DNA from: Euprymna scolopes
Lineage: Eukaryota
Assembly (NCBI GenBank): GCA_053919585.1
Contig: CM132783.1
Length of the DNA: 64,000 bases
Direction: 5' to 3' (one strand)
Shown one piece after another: positions 8,050-53,282 of the stretch (positions within the stretch are counted from its first letter, which is position 1; the number at the start of each line of letters is the position of its first letter). A model generated the notes under the pieces. That model was not told the origin of the DNA. It saw only the letters and a program-made list of their open reading frames with translations, and made no database searches. A program made the translations under genes and the position numbers.

Positions 8050-8123
<74 letters not shown>

Positions 8124-8155
8124 GTCTTTACAGAAGCAGTAATTTGTTGCTACAC

Positions 8156-8213
8156 AGTTATGAGCATGTTTCGGTCTTCTAGTGTTTAGTAACTAGAGAC
8201 CTCTTCAGACAAC
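8156..8213 (-). ncRNA. Type I hammerhead ribozyme motif (Penelope pLTR type), imperfect stem III
   Basis: gttgt-CTGAAGA-ggtctctagt..actagaagacc-GAAAC-ATG-CTC-ataac; stems I and II pair. Confidence 0.7.
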
Positions 8214-9314
8214 AAACGCTTATTTATGAAAGCGGAATTTAGAATGAAAACCGAAAATCAACTTTCAGCAAAAGAAGGTTGGTTTTTTTATCTTTTAAAG
8301 GATCGTGGGGGTGACGGTTCAACTGTGTGAAGAGCATGGTTGATTGTGTGCGAATTTGTTAGTTTATTTATTTTCCTATTTGTTTGTTCACTTATTTACC
8401 GTGTCTTTATTCAATCATTTCTTGTTTGTGTTAGGGAATAGGGTATGTAAGGTTAGGGGTTGTAAAGCCAGGGTTGTGTAGGTGTTATCTTAAACAAGTA
8501 TGAGCTTAGCTTGTCTGTTGCCTGCTGCCTGTCTGAGACTACTCCTTTTTATTATTTGTTTTAATTTAATATTCCTATTTGTCTCTGCTAAAAGATTAGG
8601 ATTTACTCGGATCTGTTGACCATTTCTTGGTCTTCTAGTGAACGATGGCGGGGAGGAAGGGGAGTGAGAAGCGTAAGAAAGAAAGGAAAGAAAAGAGTAG
8701 GGGGAGATGGAATGGGGAAGAAAGTAAGAGGGTGAAGAATAAGGAAGAGAGAAGAAAAGGGAGAAGGGGGAGAGGGGTGGCATCATTTGTTTTCTCTTAT
8801 TTAAACAAAATCGGTTTTTTATTCTTTATTTTTTTATTCTTATCTTATTTGACCACTCTAATACTTATTGCTATTTACTTTATTTGATGTCGGTTATTAA
8901 TTGGTGTATTTGTAAATTTGTTATTAAACTTTTCATAATGATAGTAATTGAAAAACTCAGAATATATGTCATTATAAAACTTATGATGGTTAAATGCAGT
9001 CATGTTTATTTTTATTTATTCATTTAGTTTTTTCTTCTTCTTTTTTATTTTTATTTTTTTTATTTATTTATTTATTGGCAGAAATAATGATTATTCAGCT
9101 AGAAGGGTGATTAGGAAATCCTCCCAGTTATTTGATACTGGGAGGAATTCCTAATCACTCTTCCTAATGTTGACTAGATGTCGACCATAAAAAAACTATT
9201 TTTTAATTTAGCCACAGTTAAATTTGCATTTTGATCTTGTATTTTGTCTACCAGTGTGGATTGGGGGACCATTGAATTTCTTTAATTAATTATAATCTGG
9301 GAAGTTGATTTTAA

Positions 9315-9942
9315 GCCTTTAGAATGTGCAGCCCCACATATTTTAATGATGAAATTACGAATGTTTTCGAAACATTACAGTATCCGTTCTATTTCATTTC
9401 TTACGCAATGAAAAAAAGCTACGAACATACGCTATAATATAAAATAACAGAAAAATAAAACCAATACCTCCCTACTAAAGAGACATCTTTTTATTCCCAC
9501 CCACACTAAAAATACAAAAATCTACGACACTCTTAATAAACTTGGTTTTCACTTGATACAAACAACTTCCACAACAATAAAACACACATTAAAAACTACC
9601 AAGAACTCTCCCAAAACCCTCACATCCAACGCCGGTAACCCATGTAACGATTTCCAACAAGCATACATAGGCGAGACACAACGTAAATTGAAACTAAAAG
9701 GGGTATAAGGTAACGCCCTAAATGCACTCTTTTGCCATTGTGCGGAACACGAACATTCATTTAATTCAGATCATGCCAAAATTATAAAATTCGTGATAGA
9801 TAGAGCCAAAATGAAGACTTTTAGAGTCGGCACTGATATTAAATACTAATAATATTACGCAAAGAAAGGGCTTCTCCCATTTAGCCTTTAGTATTGAGAA
9901 AATAATAATCAAAGAACAAAACATAAAGACAGATCCTGGTTA
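9315..9942 (+). pseudogene. Penelope-like element RT C-terminus and GIY-YIG endonuclease remnant
   Basis: AFRMCSPTYFNDEI..LQYPFYFI; PCNDFQQAYIGETQR; NALFCHCAEHEHSFN; LESALI; stops and frameshifts present. Confidence 0.85.
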
Positions 9943-10049
9943 ATTCATACGATTGTCCCAAACAGTTTTTCCGTACATAATTTAAAAAAAATAAGAAGAA
10001 GAGAGAGAGAAAAAGGTGTACATAGATATTTAAATAACGTATTTTAAAT

Positions 10050-12560: not shown

Positions 12561-13898
12561 CAATTTTAAATGCCTGTAGAAAAAAGTATATATGTATATA
12601 TGTGTATGAGTATATATGTATATATATGCACATATATATGTATGTATATGTGTATATATGTATACATATAAATATGTGTGTTTTGAAGGCAAATTATATA
12701 TTTATTAAGCTTATCATTCATACCAATTGTGACCATTTCATGAAAAATTTATATTTTAAAATAGTATACAATTTTAAAATTCACCCATGAGTCAAGAAAC
12801 TATTTTAAATTTATTTTCTCGTTCACTTAAATAAATTTCTGTATATTTTTTATCATTAAAACTGAATATTGAAACTGAATAAAAATGTTTGCCACTTGTT
12901 TAAAAAAACGAATATAAAATAGACGTCATTCCGGTTTTTAATTGTGGGAAAACCTTAAAGATAATGACAGAAAATAAGAGTTGCTACGGTGTAGAAAAAC
13001 GTCATTTTCACAGACTAAAGATATAAAATAAAAAAAATCTAGAACAGCTACTACACTTTGACACCCAAATAGTATTTCCGTCATTAAAATAAATGAACTA
13101 AAGATTGCATGCAGATTATTGTTAAAGAAGAACATCACCGAAATAATTTTATTTTTTTAACATCCGTCACTATCCATTATTTTAATATATTTAGCAAAGT
13201 GTTTCTTTCTTTTTGTGGTTATTTATTTCTTTTTAATATGTGATACACAATTAATTGAGCATAATATTAAGCGTAGTTTATTATGATTCACGGTAAGTAT
13301 TTTGGCTTTTATTGGTATACGTATATACCTTTCTTGTGAGAGTCTTTCTTTTCTTTTGCAATGATAGCTTTTTAATGAGCAATTCCCGGATTTGCACATG
13401 CTCTAATTTAATGAACTTTCAGATAGTTGTATATTCATGCAGGAGTTCATGCAGAGAAACTTCGCAAATCAGTTACTAAAACTATGAGTAATTATGTCTG
13501 TTTTTCCCAAGCCACATATTAAAAACAATAAAGTGAACTTTACACAGTCAAAAGTTTCTGCTAAAACATTAAATATAAACGCAATATATAACGTACTTTA
13601 TATATTAAAAAAATCTACATTTGCAACATTCATTTACAACAACTTGTTTGCAACATTCGTCTACATAAATTTGTTTAGTAAATAAATTTACAATAAATAT
13701 TTTATTTTACTCGTTATAACATTCCTATATAACGAATCGTTTACAATAATCGCTTAACATTTTCTGATCTACTTGGCCTTCAGGCCGGGATCAAAAATCC
13801 CCCCATTTTGAGTTGGCCATGTGCCTGTTTTTTGTTCATCGTTGATTTTGACTGTATTTTTTAACATGAATAAAAGATTTAATATCTCAAAGTGTAGT

Positions 13899-14741
13899 AT
13901 CTGTTCCGGCAGATACTGCTAGCTATGACTAGCTATGACTATCTACCAGGCAACCCCACATGCCTGACCTTTAACCAGCTCCCATTTCCCACCTCTCGGG
14001 AGTTGGTCCCCTTTTCCCTTCACTCCTCACATTAAAAATCGGCCTTGTGCCTAATTTGCTCGGTGGGGGAGCAAATAAATACCATCTGTTCCGGCAGATA
14101 CTGCAAGCAAAGACCATATGTGGGGGCGACCCCACATATAAGACCTTGGTCAATGTAGGGGCAACCCTTCATACCAATTGTCACTATCCAGCTCCCCTCC
14201 TCCCCGGGGAGTTGGTCCCCATTTCCCCTTCACTCCTCACATTAAAAATCGGCCTTGTGCCTAATTTGCTCGGTGGGGGAGCAAATAAATACCATCTGTT
14301 CCGGCAGATGCTGCAAGCTATGACTAGCTATGACTAGCTATGACTAGCAAAGACCAGATGTGGGGGCAACCCCACATGCCTGACCTTTAACCAGCTTCCA
14401 TTTCCCACCTCTCGGGATCTGGTCCCCTTTTCCCCTTCCCCCTCCCTTCACTCCTCACATTAAAAATCGGCCTTGTGCCTAATTTGCTCGGTGGGGGAGC
14501 AAATAAATACCATCTGTTCCGGCAGATACTCCATGCAAAGACAATATGAGGGGGCGACCCCACATATAAGACCTTGGTCAGTGTAGGGGCAACCCTTCAT
14601 ACCAATTGTCACTATCCAGCTCCCTTACTCCCCGGGGAGTTGGTCCCCATTTCCCCTTAACTCCTCACATTAAAAATCGGCCTTGTGCCTAATTTTCTCG
14701 GTGGGGGAGCAAATAAATACTATCTGTTCTTCAGATGCTGC
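13899..14741 (+). repeat. Higher-order tandem array, about 210-218 bp monomers alternating A/B, hairpin rich
   Basis: Conserved core actcctcacattaaaaatcggcc..ccggcagat at 14021, 14231, 14449 and 14659. Confidence 0.9.
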
Positions 14742-15842
14742 ACTTCCATTTCTTGTTCTTTTTCGGTGGAGGAGAAATCCTTCACGACCGAGACAATTTT
14801 TATTTTTGTACCTTTTCTTCACGTTAAAAAACGACCCTGGTGTCTAACTCTGTCCCGTGGGAAGGCATAGTAAATAGGTACAACAATCGCTTAATAAATT
14901 CATCTAGGCTGAATCATTTACAATAAGTCTGTATAAGTTATTCCTGCACGAATATTCTCTACAATTAATCTTCAGGCAAATTTTTTTGGAGCATTCTACA
15001 TCGAATATTTTATAATATGGATTAATATCCGACAAAGTATGAATCAAAAAAAAAAAGATTCTTCTGATCAGATGCGGATCTTCCGAGGTTCAAGACCAAA
15101 ATAAAAGTTTTGAGTCAGTACCATGGATAGTAACCCTGTGATTTTTTTTAAAACTTGACCTGAGAAATAGAATCTTGCAAACAGTTTGATAATAAGTATT
15201 CACTCGTTTCCCTTCACATAAAGGGGTTGATACGCAGTAAAATAGATAATCCTGTCACTCAATTTTAACTGAGCTTTAAAATATGCCTTGAAACACGATC
15301 TATTTTAAAATGTGAATGGAATTTCAAAAGAAAGAAAAAGAAATTGTCTACTTATGTTGAAGTACACATATGATTTTTGTAGCTTAGGCCGACACACCTC
15401 CTTATCAGTGCGCGTGAGTGGTTACAAGGGTAGCGGGTGTGAGTGGTGGTGGCGATAGAGGAGGGATATAGAAATGGGTTTGTCCATTCTCTGCAGTCTC
15501 TGCAAAAACATCTCATCAGGAGGAGCTACTTTTTTCAGCTCTCAGAACATTAAGGTAAGTCCAATTCTAATAAGATCTCCCATACAACACTAAAGAATTT
15601 CATGTCCGAATATAGAAAACAGATTATAATCCACGTCTTTTTAACAACTTTCTCTCCCTTTTTCTTTTTCAATTTTGTTCTTACTCTTTCTCTCTCCCTC
15701 TCTTTCTCTCTCTCTTTCTCTCTCTTTCATGTATATATACTTGTATATATACATGCACTCCGCAATATACGCATTAATATTATATTTAATGCAGATTACT
15801 TATTTTTCGATTTATGAGTCGTCTATTGATTATTATCTAATA

Positions 15843-20107: not shown

Positions 20108-20345
20108 TATTTTTTATTGTGACGCTATCACTAGACGGCTTGCCTACCACGGCTTAAGAGAGTCCCATCTACCCTCAAGAAAAGGATAGACCGCGCCAGT
20201 GTCTCAACCTGGTATTTTACCTTACGGTACATACAACGCCTTACCATTCCAAAATGGTCGCCCATCTGGTACTGGCCAGGTTCAACGTTGCTTAACTTCG
20301 GTGATCTGACGAGAATTGGTGTGTCAACGTGATTATGCCGTTTTG
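20108..20345 (-). mobile_element. 5S rRNA-derived SINE3-like copy or 5S pseudogene with unrelated tail
   Basis: 20345-20228 reads cggcataatcacgttgacacaccaattctcgtcagatcaccgaagttaagcaacg..agtaccagatgggcgacc, clearly 5S-like; about 120 nt body ending aataaaaaa. Confidence 0.75.
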
Positions 20346-20979: not shown

Positions 20980-21185
20980 GTGTGTCAATGGCCTATTGAT
21001 GCGTCAAGTGCTTGTCACCTTCCTCTTCCAGTCCCTACCGCTGGCTAGCCTATGCAAAAAGGAAGCAGAGTGCGTAAGTCTTCCCTGCCAGTACGTAGCC
21101 TCTCCATAGGAAAGCTCCATGTAGTGCCTCCCCGTGGCGACACATGTAAATTAAGTACCTTGCGGACTCAAGCAGAACTACAGGA
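20980..21185 (+). ncRNA. HDV-like ribozyme at RTE 5' end
   Basis: P1 gtgtgtc(20980-86)/gacacat(21139-45); P2 tgtagt/actaca; P3 gcc/ggc with L3 tccccgt; P4 cttg/caag; J4/2 C21173-aga. Confidence 0.7.
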
Positions 21186-21788
21186 GACTCGGAGGTGGTC
21201 TGCCCCCAGACATGCGGCATGCTAGGCCCATCGTTGTATGGACAAGCCCTGATGCCCATGAACAGGCCCCCAGCTATGGGTAAATAGTACCACTCCCTTG
21301 TGGTTATTCGTTGGTTCGATAAAGGCTAAGGGAGTAAACCCTAACAGAAAATCTGGAGTGTAGCCCCACAGGCAGACAAGTTCTGTACTCAGCCTTGTTC
21401 TGGTAGCTACTGCAGTCAACCTGGTGCCGGACGTACTGGTACTTCCATTCCTCTGGGCAACACCAGCAAGACCGAGAGGGGGATTCTGACGATTGGGCAA
21501 CCCAGTCTCTCCACAAATCTGCCCTGGCCAGCGCCCTGGAGAGAAAACTTCAGCTATGCATCTGTATAGGACTAAACAGGGGAGCGACAGTCACTCGTTA
21601 TAAGCCTACAGCTCAATTGGCGTACAGCTGGGCGCCAGGGGTCGGTCCTAACGGTGGGAGTAGTTATTTAATTTCATTGGACAGCTACCGCCCGCCACAA
21701 AGCTGAGCAGCCCTCAGTCAGTAAGGTGCTATCCCGCCACTGGCCACCTACCCTACTGGGTGCGTAGGGTATAGGATGATTCCAACAA

Positions 21789-24700
21789 GTGGCCAGTAAC
21801 CATTGTACCAAACAAAACCAAAAGAAACAAAAAGAACCCAACACTCAGGCTAGGGTGCTGGAATGTTCGTACTATGACGATTGGCCTATCTACCGACATC
21901 TCCGATATTCGAAAAACTGCCATCATCAACAACGAGCTATCGAGACTCAAAGTAGACATTGCTGCACTCCAAGAAACACGCTTAGCTGACACCGGATGCC
22001 TAAAGGAATCGGACTATACCTTCTTCTGGCAAGGAAAACAGGAAGAGGAGGTCCGGGAACAGTGTGTTGGTTTCGCAGTCAGAAACTCACTGCTTCATAA
22101 CATACAACTCTCTGATTCAGCTACTGAGCGCCTAATCTCACTACGACTGAACACCACAGATGGAACAATTAATCTATTATGTGTGTACGCCCCAACACTC
22201 GCAGCGCCTGACGAAATCAAGGAGCACTTCTACACACAGCTGGATAGCACCATCAAGGCATTTCCATAAAATGAAGACCTGATTATACTTGGGGACTTTA
22301 ATGCACGTGTTGGTGGCAACAGCGATGCATGACCAGCTGCCTTGGTAACTTTGGAGTGGGCAAATGCAATGGTAACGGCCAGCGCCTTCTAGAACTCTGT
22401 GCCTACCATGACCTCTGCATTACCAACACATTCTTTGCTGCCAGACCGCATCACAGAGTGTCCTGGACACATCCCAGATCAGGGCGTTGGCACCAGCTCG
22501 ATCTAATCATTACTAGACAAAGGTACCTAAAACATTTTCTGATGTCTAGAGCCTTCCACAGTTCTGATTGTGATACAGATCATTCCCTAATATGCAGTAG
22601 AGTCGAACTTCAACCCAAAGATTTCTACCACACTAAACAGGAAGGTGTTGCCCGTATTGATGTTAGCAAAACCACATACTCAGATCGCAATGCGAAATTC
22701 AACGAGATGTTAACCCCCACCTTCAAAGGAGACAACACCCGGACTGCATCTGAACAGTGGGAAACACTGAAAAATGCCATCCACTTTACAGCTCTCAAAT
22801 CTTTGGGAGGAGGACAGGTAGCAAACACAATGACTGGTATGATTCCAACTCTGCTACCCTCAACCCTCTGATTGAGGCAAAGCGTTTGTCCTTGCTCTCA
22901 TACAAGGCCAACCCATCTCCTACATCGCTGGCTGCACTGAGGCTTTCCAAAAGGGCAGTTCAAAAGGCTGTAAGAGAAGCTGCAAACAACTACTGGATGG
23001 AGCTCTCCAAGTCTATCCAGCATGCAGCTGATACAGGAAATATAAAAAATATGTATAACGGGATCAGGAGAGCTACAGGACCCATAATTAACAAAACTGC
23101 TTCACTGAAGTCTAAATCGGGTGAACCCATACTAGACAAAGTTAAATAGCTAGACAGATGGGTTGAACACTACTCCGAGCTTTACTCCAGGGAAAACATG
23201 GTACATCAGTCCGCTCTGGATGCCATTGATCGTCTACCGCTGATACATGAGCTCGATGAGGAGCCTTCCATAGAAGAACTATCCTGGGCAATAGATAGAC
23301 TGCCATCAGGAAAAGCCTCAGGAAGACTATATTCCAGCAGAGGTCTTAAAAATTGGAAAGGCTAGCCTGCTTGAGCCCCTCCATAGTCTTCTGATACAGT
23401 GTTGGAGAGAAGGCTCAGTGCCTCAGGGCATGAGAGACGCAAATATCTCTCTACAAACACAAAGAGGACCGCGGTGACTGCAACAACTACCGCGGTATCT
23501 CACTGTTGAGCTTCGTTGGCAAGCTATTCGCACGTATAGTATCACTGCGACTACACGTTCTTGCCGGCCGAATCTACCCAGAATCTCAATGCGGCTTTCG
23601 TTCAGAGAGATCAACAATCGATATGATCTTCTCTCTACGCCAATTGCAAGAGAAGTGCAGAGAGCAAAACCAGCCTCTGTATGTTGCCTTCATAGACCTG
23701 ACCAAGGCATTCGATCTCGTGAGCAGAGATGGACTATTCAAAATTCTCCCACTGATCGGATGCCCACCAAAACTCCTCAACATCATAAGATCCTTTCATG
23801 ATGGCATGAGGAGCACTGTGCAATTTAACGGTGGCATGTCTGCTGAGTTCGGGGTGAGAAGTGGTGTCAAACAGGGTTGTGTGTTGGCCCCAACACTCTT
23901 CGGCATCTTCTTCTCCCTACTCCTGAAGCATGCTTTCAAGAACACAACGGATGGTATCTGCTTGCACTCCAGGTCAGATGGTGGTCTCTTCAACATCGCC
24001 AGACTCCGCTTCAGGACAAAGAACAGGACAGTTCGAATAAGAGACATGCCGTTTGCAGATGATGCAGCTATAGCATCGCATCAGGAAGATGGTCTTCAAA
24101 GACTGATGGACAGGTTTGCTAATGCTTGCAGCCTGTTCGGTCTCACCATTAGCCAGAAGAAAACCCAAGTCATGGGACAAGCAACCGCCTCCCCACACAG
24201 CATCACAATCCAAGGCACACCACTAGAGGTTATACGTCAGTTTCAATATCTAGGTTCCACTGCTTCAGACACCCTCTCATTGGACGTGGAGCTAAACAAA
24301 AGGATTGGAAAGGCATCCACAACCCTCTCTAAACTAACTAAAAGAGTCTGGGAAAACAGGCACCTTACCACTTCCATCAAGATGACCGTCTACAGAGCGT
24401 GCATCCTCAGTGTTCTACTGTATGGGAGTGAATCCTGGACTACATATTCAACACAAGAGAGGAAACTCCAGGTCTTCCATATGAGGTGTATACGAAGGAT
24501 ACTTGGTATCACATGGCAGGACAGAGTGAGTAATACTGATGTTCTGCAGAGAGCGGGCATCCCATCCATTTAATCCCTACTGCGTGAGCAACATCTTCGC
24601 TGGCTGCGCCATGTGCACAGGATGGACGATGGGCGCATCCCTAAAGACCTTCTCTATGGCGAGCTTGCCTCAGTTTCAAGAAAGAGGGGGCGACCTCATC

Positions 24701-25011
24701 TTCCAAACAGGGATGTCTGCAAGTGTGACATGAAGGCTTTCTCGGTGGACAGGAATACATGGGAAGCCTCTGCAGCTGACAGAACTGCCTGGAGGAAAAT
24801 GATACGCCAGGGGATTATCATCAGCGAGAGGACCCTCCATGTTGAAAACGCTGCAAGGAGAGCTAGGCGAAGAGCGAGTGTACAGGCGGAACAGCCGGAC
24901 GAAGCGGCAAATTGCATAACAACCTTCGTATGTCAAGACTGTGGCAGACTATGCAAATCAAGAATTGGTCTCTACAGTCACACAAAAGGGTGCATACAGG
25001 CAACATCTTAA
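21789..25011 (+). pseudogene. RTE ORF: AP endonuclease, reverse transcriptase, C-terminal zinc finger; several stops and frameshifts
   Basis: CWNVRT, IAALQETR, LGDFNARVG, DCDTDH, FIDLTKAFD, GVKQGCVLAP, FADD, CQDCGRLCKSRIGLYSH; stops at 22267, 22330, 23147, 24571. Confidence 0.95.
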
Positions 25012-25089
25012 TACGGCGCTGATCCATAGTCGTTTCGACTGACGGATGCCACACACACCCACACATATATATACATATATATATATATA

Positions 25090-25690
25090 CTCGCAAAAGT
25101 ACCGTCGTTGACTGGGTTCAAAAACAGCCTACAGAAAATGGACTCTGATTTATGAAAGTATGATAGGTTATGATAAGGAAGGGTTGTAAATTTGGGTTTA
25201 ATTTGGGGATATCAAAACCAAAGCAAAATATGATGAAAGTAAACATAAAATAGATAAACCCCATAATTTATTATACCATACCTGTTCACACTGAAACACT
25301 TATCACAGTATTCTTTGGATCTACATTAAAAAACCTTGTTAAACTTTGTGACATATTTCCATTCTATGGAGGTCAGGTGCGAACGAACACCCCATAATTT
25401 TATTATACAATATTTCTTCAAACTGAAACATAATTATCAAAGTATACTTACGCAGATAGATATGAAAAGTCTTTATTAAAGTTTGTGCCTATTTCCATTC
25501 TATGGGGTCCAGGCGCGAACGCAGACCCCAGAATTTAAATGAACCACCGTTCTGCCAGATCAAACATACCCATTCCTGTGTCTCGATACATCTTCTATCA
25601 TTATATGTAATCAGTTTTTTTTTAAATAGTCAACCATATAGGAGCCTATTCGTGACCAGACACACACACACATTCAGCTTTATATTATAT
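25090..25690 (-). mobile_element. Helitron/DINE-like non-autonomous element with internal duplication of about 132 bp
   Basis: Decayed 3' hairpin gtaccgtcgttgactgggt; duplicated ccccataattttattata..ccattctatgg at about 25260 and 25390; (CA)n near 5' end. Confidence 0.5.
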
Positions 25691-43564: not shown

Positions 43565-46500
43565 CACTCGTTTGTAGAATTCAAATGATACGAATATTAT
43601 TTGTTTTCTCATTGTCAGTTTATATCACGTTTTTTCTTCTATACGTGCACCTGTCTTGTATACAACTGATTTATACAGGTATTAATTTTGTCCACTTATA
43701 TTTTGCAAATCTATAGTTTTTATTTATTTTTCTCTCCGGCATAGCGGTTGTAGTGTAGAGAAAACAAAAAAGGGGGTATTTTTGGATTGGAACAAAAAAA
43801 TCTCTTTTGTCAATTATTTGAATTATTCGGTCTAATGTTTTTTTGATCTCAAGTATTATTCTAACAAAGTTTCGGCAGAAGTTATTTAAGTGTATTTTCT
43901 CCAACTGAATAGTTTCGGTCGAACACGAACGAGGACATTTGTCCAAATAATATAAATAATCTAAATTATAAATTCGTATAAAAAAAATTGAGAAACACAA
44001 TGTTTCAATTTAGAATTATATGGGAGGATTTTCACTTCTCTGATTGGAACACAAAAATGAATTATATTATCAAAAGAAATAGTACATTTTATATTATTTA
44101 TTTGTTATGGAGTAAAAAGTGAAATGGAACAAATTGGGCGCAAATATAACAGATACTACACTTTATTTCAAATTAAAAGGAAATGCATAGGCTGTAGACA
44201 AGAAATTATATTTAACTCATATATGAAACTGTGATAAGTGTTATAATTATGAGTCCTTGTTGGTCAGCGAGTAATCACTGTTAAAAGTAGATACTCTCTA
44301 AAGCTGACAAATTGACGTCTCGGCATCGTAAGCATATATTAGTCACATGAACAGTAGATTATTTATTTGTGAAAATCAAACATTTATAGTTACAATGTCT
44401 CGAAATAAGTTGTTATATTTCTTAGCACAGTCAAAAAATACGAAAGCAAAACTGAGAAGTGGAGTATGAGTGCAAATGATTTAACATAAATTTTAATTAT
44501 TAGTGTCAACACAGACGTCATTAGATGCGTTGTATAGTACATACAACATAACTCTAATCATATATATATATATTTTTTCACACACACACATATATTCAAA
44601 TAGATCGGAGCTTACATTAACCAGAACATTGTGAAAATAACGCTTAAAATAAGAACAGAAATCCGGAGAATATACACAATACAAATAGTCTATCCTCATC
44701 TTACATTTTAGACATTATGTCATGTTTTAGTGCAAGTGTTTGGATGTATATTTACGTAGGCCATACTTTAGTTCGACTTGATTAGACGTGTGTATCCCTT
44801 TTGCAAGAAATGACCATTTTAATATCCAACATTTAACTCATCTGTTTTTTTTTTGCTAATGGATCCAAGTTTATTCTTTCTTTCCATGCCTGTGCCTGGT
44901 TTCAGGTTCATAATATTTATTTGGATGACCTTTTGATTAATTCGATTATTATTTGATGTTTTTTATTACATATTATCGCCGGTAGCACGTCTTTGGCAAA
45001 ATGATTTTTGTTACATACGGCCTAAGTACTAAATATGGTAAGAGGTTCATGATTTCAATTAAATAACATTTTGGTACATTTGCTAATTATTTTATGTCCT
45101 TTTCCCATTTTGTCGCTGTATATACGTGTTTATAAAAACGATTTATTGGTATACACAGCTTGCATATTAGACAGCAGAGCACAAAGTGTTCTTTCCATAA
45201 AACAAGTCCAGGTTAAAACATGTGACTTTAAAGAAAAGTTGACTAAAATTTCATGAAGTAATTTGTTGACAAAAACTACGAAATGAAAGAAGCAAATCCA
45301 AATCTAGCTTGAAAAATAGTTGATTCAAATGTCCTTGTAGAACCATCCCTCCGCCATTTATAACAGGATATTCTAACGGCTTTTGCGGTGGTTTCTATTT
45401 GTTTTAATTTCTTATTTTCTTCTTCTTCATCTCCTTTTTCGTCTTGCGGTGTCATCTTAATGATCATGGTGGATGCTAGCACCGACTTACAATCATAAAC
45501 AAATAAAACAACGTAAACTCATCAGAAAAAATACAACTTAGATACATTATGTATAAATCAGTTGTGCCTCTGAGAGTGTCTGATAAAGGACCATTAAACG
45601 TTATCTGCTAATTGCTATCTCTCGAGTCATCTCTGCTTATGGGTTAAAACTAAACCCGATCTGACTAACGCTTCCAATTTTTTTCGCTCCCCCCCTGCGA
45701 GTTACCAACCGTCGTTCAGTGTCCTAAAACCCTCCATCAAATGTCGTAAACTAGAAAACTGTTCTAAAACAAACTTTGACGCTTAAATTTATTGATTGAA
45801 AACTGGAAATCCTGTATTCGATCTTTTGTCTAATTTTGTGACAGAAAAGCGTGACTCACCCTCTCGGCCATTGTCAGGTGACTACAAATTCCATTTCTGA
45901 AATTCTTTGTTGCCTAATTTCTAACAATTATCCTGGCTCATTTACCCTCAACAATTTTTTCCAGTTTTTATCAGTCACTTCCCGGTAGACATCCATAGTA
46001 TCACATCCTAACCTGAAACAATAATAGACCTAAATCTTCGATCTTAAAAAAAAACTTTTAAGGTAATAACTTCAAAAAAAGTTGACTAAAATATCCTGAA
46101 TATGAGAAATCCGTCTTACCTAAAAAAAAAAACTGACCAACAGTAAATGTCGAAATAAGTTGGTCAAATAATTTTATTTTTCAAACTATCTGACGAAAAA
46201 ATCCTACCTGTAAAAAATAACTGACATCATTCTCCCTCGATCAAAGTATGTGACTAAAATATCCTACCTTGAAAAAACACCGTACTTTTTAGAGACCTAT
46301 AGGTCATAACTTGAGAGAAAGAAATATTCAAAACTTGTTTCCTTGACGAAAATATTTAGCAAAAACGTTTTTTTTTCAAGCTATAGTACAAATATATTTT
46401 TCACGGATAATCAATAGTGCTTCAGGGATTCAATTTAATACTTGAAATTCTAATTTTTAGTCAAAGTCTTAATTATTTAAATATTTAAATAGCTGTAATC

Positions 46501-51843: not shown

Positions 51844-53282
51844 GAAATTAAAGATGTTTGAAGATAGATTCCTCTCCCATGTTTACGAATGAAATGAAAA
51901 TAAAATAAATTACTGTAATTTCTGTTTAAGGTATTAAACTTTTTCTTATCCAGGAGGCACCTCCAAAGAATAGTTGTTTTGTATTTCTGCAAAATTTATT
52001 CTGGGTTTACAGATAGTTGCCTAAATATAGAATCACAGTTTGAGGGAACTATTTTATAAAGAGAATTATTTAATTAATGTGTCACTGATTATTTATCTCC
52101 ACATAAATGTTAGAAGGAGATACAAAATCGGTTTTATGGGGGAAACCTGACGTCTCCAAAAGTGACAAACTGGATCTGAACTAATTTTTTTTAAAAAAGC
52201 CTCCGCCTAGAAGAATTTCCTTTGCAGTGCTCGAGGACGGAAATGATAAAGTAAAGTATCAGAACAGGTACTACACTTTGAATGATTGCTTTGCTAAAAT
52301 ACGACAATATATAGTTTCATAAATTAGACACAACGATATCGTTTTTGTTGCAATTTATTGCACAAAAAAGGAAACCTTCGCTAAAAGCAGAAATGAGTAT
52401 TTTATCGTTTTCCTTATTTAAAAATGATTAGTTAGCTTAGTTTTCGACGGCATATTTGCCTTTTAAAGATAAAAAATTGCTATTAAATAATTATTAATTA
52501 ATATTTTTTAATTTAGCAATTAATATTTTCCATAATATGATCGACAATTTACAATTGCCAATATTTAACCTATTTAAGTAAAGATTTGTAATTAATGTCC
52601 TGAAGTTTATACAAAAATATTTGGCTAAAAAATATCGTGTGGTTCAAACACGTTGGTGTGGATTTTTCCCCGGCAGCAGATTCATCAAAAGGATTCTTAT
52701 AAGAAAAGTGTATTCGTAAACTTGTATCTAAATCAATTTCCTTTCCGTGTGATATAATTTTATTAATTTATAGCATTAATAAAACCTTATCGTAGAAAGA
52801 AAATTGATTTAGCTCCAATGAATAATATCGCTATATTATTTTTATCTCGTTGAGATAAAAAAATATAATAAGCGTCACGGTATTTTATGTACTTTGTTTC
52901 AGCGCCCTATTATACTAAAACAAATTCTAGTAAAAAATCGATACTTGATTTTTTAACATAACTTTGGTATATTAACATTGTAACTTACAATGTTAATATA
53001 CATGTACCCTGCGTTTTTCACATTAAGAAAGTAATACTATGGAACAGAAAAAAAGATATTTAATGAACTCTTTCGATAAGTGGTCTATACTTGTGCGGGT
53101 TTACATTTTTGTGTTGTGGCTATTTCTTTTTAGACGCGTTAGTTATTGGAATAGGAATTGCTAATTGTATCAGAATCGGGAATTTTAAGAAAGAATCTTG
53201 AATTTTACCAGATTTAGGAAAAATTAATATCTTCCCATCCCTAATGGATATCACACGCACACACACACACACATACATACAT

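What the first reader, a model, noticed from the sequence alone, without database searches (positions are those of the whole stretch)
13899..14741. Alternating A/B tandem array made almost entirely of hairpins with GNRA tetraloops
Seen: a core of about 83 bp recurs at 210/218/210 bp spacing, separated by two alternating spacer types (428-bp dimer). Plus-strand hairpins include atatgtgggg-GCGA-ccccacatat (14116-14139), aggg-GCAA-ccct, atgtgggg-GCAA-ccccacat, atttgctc-ggtgggg-gagcaaat (14054-14076), atctg-ttccgg-cagat and ccagctccc..gggagttgg. Loop CCCACC (13988-13993) is complementary to loop GGTGGG (14062-14067). The array is GC-richer than its flanks. I found no hammerhead, twister, pistol or HDV core. 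Inference: a concatemeric cDNA of a structured small or circular RNA, or a rolling-circle-amplified satellite; possibly an unrecognised RNA motif.
Basis: partly seen in the sequence, partly recalled or inferred. Interest (0 to 1): 0.7.

Follow-up and report, generated by a model that had tools for sequence, protein, structure and literature searches.

The report
U2-snRNA-derived retroposon repeat array
The hairpin-rich A/B array is the inside of one copy of a very abundant jumping element whose ~200-base units are decayed copies of the spliceosomal U2 small RNA. It is carried and copied by an active L1/Tx1-like LINE, so it is a repeat family and not a new RNA gene or ribozyme.

Summary
There is a 428-bp A+B dimer repeated 1.9 times, it is GC-rich, and only its plus strand folds better than chance. 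The stems capped by GNRA loops keep pairing through compensatory changes.

The array is not a stand-alone RNA gene. It lies inside a 1.12-kb retroposed element (window 13758-14883) flanked by a 16-bp target-site duplication.

The element's 5' hairpin plus the 20-nt motif TCAAAGTGTAGTATCTGTTC match the first ~46 nt of U2 snRNA. Head plus one unit matches Rfam U2 over the whole model, at 47.8 bits against a gathering score of 46. Each unit starts at about U2 nt 38/39 and ends in a conserved structured tail.

The same head, motif, units and tail bracket a young L1/Tx1-like LINE, many of whose copies are 100% identical. Junction counts in this 5.9-Gb mollusc genome:
- head to terminal unit (short ~195-bp form): about 20,700
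- unit to unit: about 46,000
- head to LINE 5'UTR: 437
- LINE to LINE: 216

RNA libraries hold the family on both strands, embedded in varied flanks. I found no ribozyme and no sign of a circular RNA.

The closest known system is crocodilian SINEU with U2-headed Tx1 LINEs, plus the U2-targeting LINEs Keno and Utopia. I rate it a new variant of a known kind.

The circular RNA, rolling-circle and novel-motif readings are not.

The scan's notes held no earlier report of this family on other DNA.

The parts
13742..13757 (+). 5' copy of the target-site duplication (TACAATAATCGCTTAA)
   Evidence: 15 of 16 bases match 14879-14894 (D12). It begins with TACAA, like 17 of the 19 duplications found in other copies.
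13758..13796 (+). 5' end of the element: the U2 snRNA-derived head. The stem-loop I-like hairpin cttggcc-ttca-ggccggg is at 13772-13790. The head breaks off after ...GATCAAA, about U2 nt 30.
   Evidence: The same head in other copies aligns to Rfam U2 nt 1-47 almost identically. Other copies carry it with a C(UUCG)G or UUUU loop.
13797..13886 (+). Last ~90 nt of the 3'UTR of the partner LINE, ending ...AACATGAATAAAAGATTTAATATC
   Evidence: Window 13800-13919 is 92.8% identical to L020:985-1109, directly downstream of the LINE ORF2. The same UTR is seen in L051:3260-3360. This 3'UTR has at least 639 candidates genome-wide, and all 40 scored are 100% identical.
13887..13906 (+). Junction motif TCAAAGTGTAGTATCTGTTC, equal to U2 snRNA nt 27-45 and including the branch-point-binding GUAGUA. 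It forms the 5' arm of a hairpin with the start of whatever module follows.
   Evidence: Rfam U2 alignments. It follows the LINE 3'UTR in 30 of 30 sampled loci and is followed there by units, by unit C or by another LINE. It also precedes the LINE 5'UTR at 437 sites.
13899..14083 (+). Unit A1 (185 bp). It carries the (CTAGCTATGA)n microsatellite, a truncated GCAA hairpin, the ccagctccc/gggagttgg hairpin and the structured tail.
14084..14293 (+). Unit B1 (210 bp). It has two GNRA hairpins (GCGA at 14116-14139, GCAA), the ccagctcccc/ggggagttgg hairpin and the tail.
14294..14511 (+). Unit A2 (218 bp)
   Evidence: Reads show a 10-nt microsatellite length variant at 14316.
14512..14721 (+). Unit B2 (210 bp)
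   Evidence: D1 shows 97% identity to B1 over 287 nt.
14722..14883 (+). Terminal unit C. It holds the GAAA-capped hairpin, a Sm-site-like AUUUUUG, the tail stem-loops and the constant 3' end ...GGCATAGTAAATAGGTACAA. The last TACAA overlaps the duplicated target.
   Evidence: 97-98% identical copies occur on many contigs. All full copies have this constant 3' end. Its read depth is 3-10 times that of the array.
14879..14894 (+). 3' copy of the target-site duplication (TACAACAATCGCTTAA)

Best explanation
Window 13758-14883 is one insertion of a non-autonomous retroposon. It was put in place by target-primed reverse transcription at a TACAA(C) site.

The element is built from U2 snRNA-derived modules, in this order:
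- a head (U2 nt ~1-30 here, nt 1-45 in most copies);
- a 90-nt remnant of a LINE 3'UTR;
- the U2 nt 27-45 motif;
- four ~200-bp internal units (A-B-A-B);
- a terminal unit C.

Each unit is a diverged U2-length copy. It starts at about U2 nt 38/39 (ATCTGTTC) and ends in a conserved stem-loop tail followed by ...AAATA..TAC(C/A)A.

The same head and the same unit/tail region bracket an active L1/Tx1-like LINE, laid out as head, motif, 5'UTR, ORF1, ORF2, 3'UTR, motif, 0 to n units, unit C. The short ~195-bp form (head, motif, unit C) and this window's copy are therefore internally deleted derivatives. I infer that the LINE's proteins move them through the shared structured 3' end.

Shown: the anatomy, the duplications, the 5' truncations, the U2 homology, the link to the LINE, the copy numbers, the plus-strand-specific folding and the covariation.

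Inferred:
- The tail and the GNRA hairpins are kept because the retrotransposition machinery needs them on the RNA.
- The arrays began when one copy joined the U2-like nt 38/39 site of another. That is the site used by the U2-specific LINEs Keno and Utopia. RT template switching could give the same joint.
- The arrays then grew by unequal exchange and by retroposition of multimer masters.
For: Dispersal. The 428-bp dimer has at least 1031 first-look candidates, with 40 scored at 93-98% identity on many contigs. Pattern counts with zero reversed-pattern controls are 20,749 head-motif-unit C junctions and 46,190 unit-unit junctions.

Retroposition. All copies share a constant 3' end and vary in how far the 5' head is truncated. 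Duplications were found in 19 of 25 monomers, with a median of 16 bp, and 17 begin with TACAA. The window's own duplication matches 15 of 16.

U2 origin. Rfam U2 scores 39.3 bits (E 1e-6) on a monomer and 47.8 bits (E 8e-9), above gathering, over model positions 1-192 on head plus unit D. It scores 23-33 bits on head plus A or D in six further loci.

LINE link. L051 and L020 hold ORF1 (zf-CCHC) and ORF2 (APE, RVT_1, zf-RVT), followed by the 3'UTR, the motif, units and unit C. In 30 of 30 sampled LINE 3' ends the motif is followed by units, by unit C or by another LINE. Head-motif-LINE 5'UTR occurs at 437 sites and LINE-LINE junctions at 216 sites. ORF2 aligns over aa 25-907 with human L1 ORF2p at E 1e-65.

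Structure. Plus strand z = -4.1 and -4.5, minus strand z = -1.0. In the tail helices 94.5% of cells pair, against 41-65% when partners are slid, and 5 pairs show double changes. In the GNRA stem 4 of 8 pairs are compensatory.

RNA. Flanks read zero depth. Both strands are covered, and 79% of laid reads run on into unlike sequence.

Literature. U2/U1-headed SINEU elements and U2-headed Tx1 LINEs are described in crocodilians (PMC4494074). Keno and Utopia insert in U2 genes, and for Utopia the downstream U2 flank is stated to start at nt 39; Keno's 3' flank is reported as identical (PMC4640811).
Against: - Units without the head give no U2 hit. The tail alone gives none either. U2 ancestry of units A and B therefore rests on their alignment to units D and C and on sub-threshold full-model hits.
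- cmscan assigns U2 stem-loops III and IV to different hairpins in head+D and in head+A. Stem-by-stem homology is not settled.
- I did not place the LINE's clade (Tx1 versus L1 proper) by phylogeny.
- I have no direct evidence that this LINE's proteins move the short elements.
- No transcription start is known. Reads give no discrete sense transcript.
- The covariation rests on few independent events, because there are only four unit types.
- I could not fetch a bona fide U2 gene from this genome for comparison.
Confidence: 0.85

Rival explanations
1. The array was built purely at the DNA level. Unequal crossing-over or replication slippage expanded a U2 pseudogene-like monomer, and retroposition only spread finished arrays. 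No insertion into a U2-like site and no template switching created the unit junctions.
For: 46,190 junctions share one identical joint, as expected from amplification of a few founders. Arrays of more than 10 kb exist, for example C1:19352620-19363290. Unit order and number vary between otherwise very similar copies.
Against: Some junctions keep a whole or partly truncated U2 head between units (L005, L012, L016, L017, L020, L008). These mimic the variable 5' truncations seen at genomic insertion sites. Adjacent copies separated only by a shared duplication exist (L033, L036/L022). The common joint falls at the published Keno/Utopia site, U2 nt 38/39 (PMC4640811).
Confidence: 0.3
2. One reading: the units encode an unrecognised structured, self-processing or circular RNA (viroid- or retrozyme-like), and the array is its rolling-circle or concatemeric cDNA.
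For: The plus strand folds significantly better than chance, and its stems covary. The family is abundant in RNA libraries.
Against: No ribozyme family matches at E <= 10 on either strand. The two strands are about equally covered. 79% of reads continue into unrelated flanks, and the sequences that follow the element's 3' end disagree with one another (agreement 0.4-0.5), so there are no defined RNA ends. The 'goes back' joints carry the U2 head between units, as in genomic tandems. The units are U2-derived and physically linked to a LINE.
Confidence: 0.03
3. Satellite-like repeats carried by a Helitron/Helentron or another DNA transposon, as in the 'pearl'-type elements of bivalves.
For: Mollusc genomes hold such tandem-repeat-bearing elements (PMC7492417). 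There is a GC hairpin at one end and a microsatellite inside.
Against: Duplications are 7-20 bp and variable in length. 5' ends are truncated to varying degrees, 3' ends are constant, and there are no terminal inverted repeats. The terminal hairpin is U2 stem-loop I. The autonomous partner encodes APE plus RT.
Confidence: 0.01
4. A cluster of variant but functional U2 snRNA genes.
For: Rfam U2 scores above gathering on head plus unit D. The branch-point-binding motif is intact, and units C and D carry a Sm-like site.
Against: Internal units lack U2 nt 1-37. The units have no spacer or external promoter region between them. Units A and B have lost the Sm site and hold a microsatellite. There are tens of thousands of dispersed copies with duplications.
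Confidence: 0.02

Closest known systems
SINEU retroposons and U2/U1-headed Tx1 LINEs of crocodilians (Kojima 2015, PMC4494074)
   Same: The 5' head is taken from U2 snRNA. Internal oligo-T runs and the lack of a pol III promoter are shared. The elements are flanked by duplications. The partner is an APE-type LINE, some of whose families carry the same snRNA head. Dimeric forms exist (SINEU-1D), and one family is made only of U2 pieces (SINEU-3).
   Different: The host here is a mollusc. The LINE shares its 3' region with the short elements as well as its head. In crocodilians no LINE sharing the SINEU-1 tail was found. Here up to dozens of U2-length units form a variable array. The target is TACAA(C), not a Mariner element. 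The family is young, with LINE copies 100% identical.
Keno (Tx1 clade, APE) and Utopia (RLE): LINEs that insert into U2 snRNA genes (PMC4640811)
   Same: The LINE body is embedded in U2 sequence. U2 runs to nt 45 upstream, and U2 sequence resumes downstream. Unit junctions fall at U2 nt 38/39, the reported 3' junction. A ~20-bp repeat of U2 nt 27-45 flanks the LINE body, like the 20-bp duplications of reptile Utopia. Tandem insertions occur.
   Different: The U2 parts travel with the element to non-U2 sites all over the genome. The U2 parts are decayed and multiplied. I did not test clade membership.
Internally deleted non-autonomous LINE derivatives (R2 SIDEs, PMC3414825; Bov-A, RIME/ingi and NARTc/L1Tc from general knowledge)
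   Same: The short elements keep only the 5' end and the 3' end of the autonomous LINE. In this window's copy the deletion joint lies at a short shared sequence (tcaaa/aaaat).
   Different: Both retained ends are snRNA-derived rather than LINE-specific. The 5' end shows no ribozyme.
SVA of hominids (composite, pol II-transcribed, L1-mobilised, with an internal VNTR; from general knowledge, also cited in PMC4494074)
   Same: It is a composite non-autonomous retroposon. Its middle is a variable-number tandem repeat that differs between copies.
   Different: SVA's VNTR units are 35-50 bp, are not small-RNA-derived, and the element ends in poly(A).
Satellite birth from double insertion of transposable elements at one target (McGurk and Barbash, PMC5932611)
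   Same: Head-to-tail dimers are made by repeated insertion at a site that the element itself regenerates. They then expand into longer arrays.
   Different: That work is in Drosophila with other element families. The process is inferred here, not shown.

Membership tests
SINEU-type retroposon (snRNA-headed, LINE-mobilised) | 5' head derived from U1 or U2 snRNA | tested here: met
   Rfam U2 nt 1-47 aligns almost identically to the head plus motif. Head plus unit D scores 47.8 bits, above gathering.
SINEU-type retroposon (snRNA-headed, LINE-mobilised) | Short non-coding element flanked by target-site duplications, with variable 5' truncation | tested here: met
   The ~195-bp monomers show duplications in 19 of 25. 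The window copy is a 1.12-kb multi-unit form with a 15/16 duplication. Its longest stop-free stretch is 120 aa, in repeats whose lengths are not multiples of three.
SINEU-type retroposon (snRNA-headed, LINE-mobilised) | Partner LINE of the Tx1 clade with shared head or target preference | tested here: inconclusive
   A LINE sharing the head, motif, units and tail is present. It has APE, RT and zf-RVT, an ORF1 with a CCHC knuckle, and its best solved relative is L1 ORF2p. No RT phylogeny was made, so the Tx1 clade is not shown.
SINEU-type retroposon (snRNA-headed, LINE-mobilised) | No pol III internal promoter; oligo-T runs inside | tested here: met
   No tRNA was found, and no 7SL or 5S hit lies in the element. 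Unit C holds TTTTT runs.
Classical pol III SINE (tRNA, 7SL or 5S head) | Head from tRNA, 7SL or 5S with A/B boxes | tested here: not met
   ARAGORN finds 0 genes. Rfam finds no such family in the element.
U2-gene-specific LINE (Keno-like) | Insertions lie in U2 snRNA genes at a fixed site, with downstream U2 starting at nt 39 | tested here: inconclusive
   Unit junctions fall at nt 38/39 (46,190 sites), and the LINE body is bracketed by U2 nt 1-45 and nt 27 onward. However, whole elements sit at TACAA(C) sites with unrelated flanks.
Hammerhead/HDV/twister-type self-cleaving repeat or retrozyme | A recognisable catalytic core | tested here: not met
   cmscan of all Rfam families at E <= 10 on both strands finds none in the array.
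Hammerhead/HDV/twister-type self-cleaving repeat or retrozyme | Discrete monomer-length or circular RNA | tested here: not met
   In one poly(A) raw-read run and three contig sets I saw no defined ends and no back-splice beyond tandem joints, and both strands were covered. Small-RNA and total-RNA libraries were not examined.
Helitron/Helentron-borne satellite | No target duplication, fixed termini, Rep/helicase partner | tested here: not met
   Duplications vary in length and 5' ends are truncated. The partner encodes APE plus RT.
Functional U2 snRNA gene | Full-length U2 with Sm site and stem-loops I-IV, scoring well above the Rfam threshold | tested here: not met
   The best score, 47.8 bits, is only just above gathering and needs large insertions and deletions. 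The window's units give no hit.

The most novel reading that the evidence does not exclude
The U2-derived parts are functional equipment of the LINE and its riders, not passive baggage.

The retained U2 5' end, the GUAGUA region, the Sm-like site (units C and D) and the terminal stem-loops could let the RNA use the snRNA pathway. That covers snRNA-type 5' end or cap handling, Sm-core assembly and nuclear re-import.

The endonuclease may also still recognise the U2 nt 38/39 site carried by every unit. The family would then build its own landing pads, and so its own arrays.
Probability: 0.15. Interest if true: 0.7.

Novelty: new variant of a known kind. Interest (0 to 1): 0.45.

Why it matters
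It turns an apparently exotic "hairpin array" into a well-defined repeat family.

Three points would interest transposon specialists:
- In the papers I could search, snRNA-headed retroposons (SINEU) and U2-headed L1/Tx1-type LINEs are described only from crocodilians. Here a comparable system is young and very abundant in a mollusc. It has about 20,700 short copies, about 46,000 internal unit junctions (roughly 9 Mb), and LINE copies that are 100% identical. Genome papers report that group as having almost no SINEs (PMC13218726, PMC8967140), which suggests this family sits among their unclassified repeats.
- Both ends of the LINE are U2-derived, and the body lies between two copies of U2 nt 27-45. 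This one layout accounts for three products: LINE tandems, ~195-bp deletion derivatives and arrays of U2-length units.
- The units keep GNRA-capped and tail helices through compensatory changes. That marks candidate RNA elements needed for this LINE's reverse transcription and makes them testable.

For annotation, these units should be masked as repeats. They should not be called U2 genes or novel ncRNAs.

Tried and rejected
- Partner among the window's own retroelements. A word-size-7 BLAST of the element against all 64 kb found no similarity to the RTE at ~20980-25100 or the Penelope-like element at 8116-9960. It found only three isolated 17-20-nt matches to the U2 nt 27-45 motif.
- tRNA-derived head. 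ARAGORN found none.
- Helentron/HINE idea. This was my first guess, from the terminal GC hairpin. I dropped it once duplications and 5' truncations appeared.
- Tail as a LINE-specific 3' end. Two LINE relatives at ~60% amino-acid identity (L082, L083) share no UTR nucleotides. They show only a loosely similar plan of a hairpin followed by CAAATA..ACC. cmscan instead aligns the tail of unit D to U2 stem-loop IV, but the tail alone gives no U2 hit. Its origin stays open.
- My remembered resemblance between unit C's tail and the U2 3' end. It was not confirmed by any tool and is not used.
- Solo LINE 5' ends and a genuine U2 gene. I used pattern counts instead and did not try to get the letters another way.
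- A search of the genome with Rfam U2 failed twice for technical reasons.
- DNA for relative P0002 was not available. Only its gene order, a LINE tandem, was returned.
- The word search with ORF2 returned no named relatives, and the best hit was 62% identical.
- The loop-loop (kissing) idea, CCCACC with GGTGGG, was not tested. GGTGGGG is also the 3' arm of a covarying helix with CTCCTCAC, which competes with it.

Full report
**1. The observation**

The sequence is as described. Tandem Repeats Finder reports period 428, 1.9 copies and 92% matches over 13949-14742. Units start at 13899, 14084, 14294, 14512 and 14722. The quoted hairpins and loops are at the quoted positions.

The array has 50% GC, against 26% and 34% in the flanks. 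Folding is strand-specific. The A+B dimer gives z = -4.1 on the plus strand and z = -1.0 on the minus strand. No Rfam family, ribozymes included, matches the array at E <= 10.

**2. It is a dispersed repeat, and a retroposon**

The window lies in a 5.9-Gb genome of 925 contigs. Labels on the sequencing runs that hold the sequence say mollusc. I did not test the species. The size and the 45 or more large contigs would fit a decapodiform cephalopod.

The 428-bp dimer has at least 1031 first-look candidates. The 40 that were scored are 93-98% identical and lie on many contigs. Comparing 19 loci shows that homology always stops at the same right end...GGCATAGTAAATAGGTACAA. On the left it stops at a GC hairpin followed by TCAAAGTGTAGT. 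The number and order of units differ between copies.

The last unit, which I call C, is far more abundant on its own than the array. Joined directly to the hairpin head it forms a ~195-bp element. These short copies have clean target-site duplications, found in 19 of 25 with a median of 16 bp. Seventeen of the duplications begin with TACAA. The short copies also have a constant 3' end and a head truncated at varying points. This is the signature of target-primed reverse transcription of a plus-strand RNA.

The window's copy has its own duplication: 13742-13757 against 14879-14894, matching 15 of 16. The element therefore spans 13758-14883.

**3. The carrier LINE**

In locus L020 the sequence that precedes the array in the window (13797-13886) continues upstream into a long ORF. 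L051 and L020 together hold a head-to-tail pair of 7.27-kb LINEs. Each has an ORF1 with a CCHC knuckle and a 1169-aa ORF2 with APE, RVT_1 and zf-RVT domains. ORF2 aligns in one stretch (aa 25-907) with human L1 ORF2p at E 1e-65, whereas R2 proteins match only the RT domain. It is therefore an L1/Tx1-like LINE. I did not resolve the clade.

The last 231 nt of its 3'UTR have at least 639 candidates, and all 40 scored are 100% identical. The family is very young.

In all 30 sampled copies the 3'UTR ends in TCAAAGTGTAGTATCTGTTC. What follows is one of these: a unit of type D, A or B; unit C directly; the 5'UTR of another LINE; or a different module.

Pattern counts over the whole genome, each with zero hits for the reversed-pattern control:

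| Junction | Sites |
|---|---|
| head 3' arm + motif + LINE 5'UTR | 437 |
| LINE 3'UTR + motif + LINE 5'UTR | 216 |
| head + motif + unit C | 20,749 |
| unit tail + next unit | 46,190 |

Some unit arrays exceed 10 kb.

The full element is thus laid out as head, motif, LINE body, motif, 0 to n units, unit C. The ~195-bp form is this element with everything between the two motif copies removed. The window's copy is another deletion derivative. It keeps the last 90 nt of the 3'UTR, and its joint lies at a short shared tcaaa/aaaat.

**4. The modules are U2 snRNA**

The head plus motif aligns almost base for base with nt 1-47 of the Rfam U2 model. That covers stem-loop I and the branch-point-binding GUAGUA.
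- A monomer scores 39.3 bits, E 1e-6.
- Head plus unit D scores 47.8 bits, E 8e-9, above the gathering score of 46, over model positions 1-192. The match includes a Sm site (AUUAUUUUUGG) and two terminal stem-loops.
- Head plus A or D in six further loci scores 23-33 bits.

Units are U2-sized (185-218 bp) and begin at ATCTGTTC, about U2 nt 38/39.

Units without the head are not recognised. U2 ancestry of units A and B therefore rests on their alignment to D and C: a shared start, a GNRA stem at the same place, a CCAG...CTGG stem and a shared 65-nt tail. cmscan maps U2 stem-loops III and IV onto different hairpins in head+D and head+A, so stem-by-stem homology is not settled.

**5. RNA structure**

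The tail has a closing helix (CTCCTCAC with GTGGGGGAG), a small inner hairpin and an overlapping hairpin (atttgctc with gagcaaat). Over these 14 pairs, 94.5% of cells pair across 26 tail variants, against 41-65% when the partners are slid. Five pairs show changes on both sides.

The GNRA-capped stem pairs in 96.9% of cells across the four unit types, and 4 of its 8 pairs are compensatory.

The independent events are few, but the signal agrees with the strand-specific folding. Stringent-type LINEs are known to recognise a structured 3' end of their RNA. This comes from my general knowledge of UnaL2 and R2. That gives the simplest reason for the conservation, and it is an inference.

**6. Expression**

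One raw-read poly(A) run and three contig sets were laid on 13300-15300.
- The unique flanks have zero depth.
- The element is covered on both strands. Unit C reads 1784 against 2128, and the array about 1.5-2 to 1.
- 79% of the laid reads continue into unlike sequence.
- The sequences that follow the 3' end disagree with one another.

The family is therefore present in transcripts mostly as a passenger. I saw no discrete RNA, no defined ends and no circular junction. Small-RNA and total-RNA libraries were not examined.

**7. How the array arose (inferred)**

Several observations bear on this.
- Internal junctions read as a complete 3' end (...AAATAAATACCA) followed by U2 from nt 39.
- For Utopia the paper states that the downstream U2 flank starts at nt 39, and it reports Keno's 3' flank as identical (PMC4640811).
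- The LINE body is flanked by a 20-bp repeat of U2 nt 27-45. Reptile Utopia elements make 20-bp duplications.
- Some junctions keep a whole or truncated head between units (L005, L012, L016, L017, L020, L008).
- Some neighbouring copies are separated only by a shared duplication (L033, L036/L022).

I therefore favour the following sequence. One copy joins the U2-like site of another, or the reverse transcriptase switches template. Unequal exchange and retroposition of multimer masters then expand the array.

Purely DNA-level expansion of a founder dimer cannot be excluded for most junctions, because they are identical.

**8. Comparison and verdict**

The closest described system is SINEU with U2- or U1-headed Tx1 LINEs in crocodilians (PMC4494074). 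A whole-word search for SINEU together with snRNA in the library found no other host.

The present case differs in four ways. The host is different. The LINE shares both ends with the short elements. The U2-length units form a variable tandem region, functionally like the VNTR of SVA. The family is recent and abundant.

It is a new variant of a known kind. It is ordinary as a class (a repeat family) but has an unusual build. Circular RNA, rolling circle and a new ribozyme are not supported.

**Limits**

- I have no genuine U2 gene for comparison, no solo LINE ends and no RT phylogeny.
- Two genome searches with the U2 model failed.

Noticed in passing
window 20228-20345 (-): Rfam 5S rRNA match above gathering (50.8 bits, E 1e-7, full model). 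It lies about 640 bp upstream of the reported RTE 5' boundary. It could be a 5S gene, a pseudogene or a 5S-derived SINE head.
   Followed up: no
window 13042-13061, 44148-44164, 52262-52281 (all minus strand): Isolated 17-20-nt matches to the U2 nt 27-45 motif. The copy at 52262 continues with TGATAC, like the LINE 5'UTR start. They are probably stubs of related U2-derived elements.
   Followed up: partly
G000:C3:72114108-72142627, and 216 junctions genome-wide: The LINE itself forms head-to-tail tandems with a period of ~7.1-7.3 kb. Four copies sit in a row here, opened by one U2 head. A 62%-identical relative in another public assembly is also in tandem, with a period of ~6.8 kb.
   Followed up: partly
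G000:C1:19352620-19363290: A run of dozens of unit-unit junctions spans more than 10 kb. The units therefore also exist as satellite-like arrays, not only as short internal arrays.
   Followed up: no
L071:~1750-1860 and L074:~1750-1860: After the same LINE 3'UTR and motif comes a different module (tctcagttactaaact...). About 800 bp further on lies an ~80% match to the LINE 5'UTR. This looks like a second LINE subfamily joined in tandem.
   Followed up: no
window 13919-13945 and 14316-14348: The (CTAGCTATGA)n microsatellite inside A units varies in length across the family. A 10-nt deletion at 14316 appears in 104 of 329 reads.
   Followed up: partly
window 12586-12677: A TA/GTATATAT simple repeat forms long palindromes and draws spurious sub-threshold miRNA hits.
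   Followed up: no
L082:8384-11221: A Ty3/gypsy-type LTR retrotransposon pol (RT, RNase H, integrase) sits directly downstream of the related LINE in another assembly.
   Followed up: no
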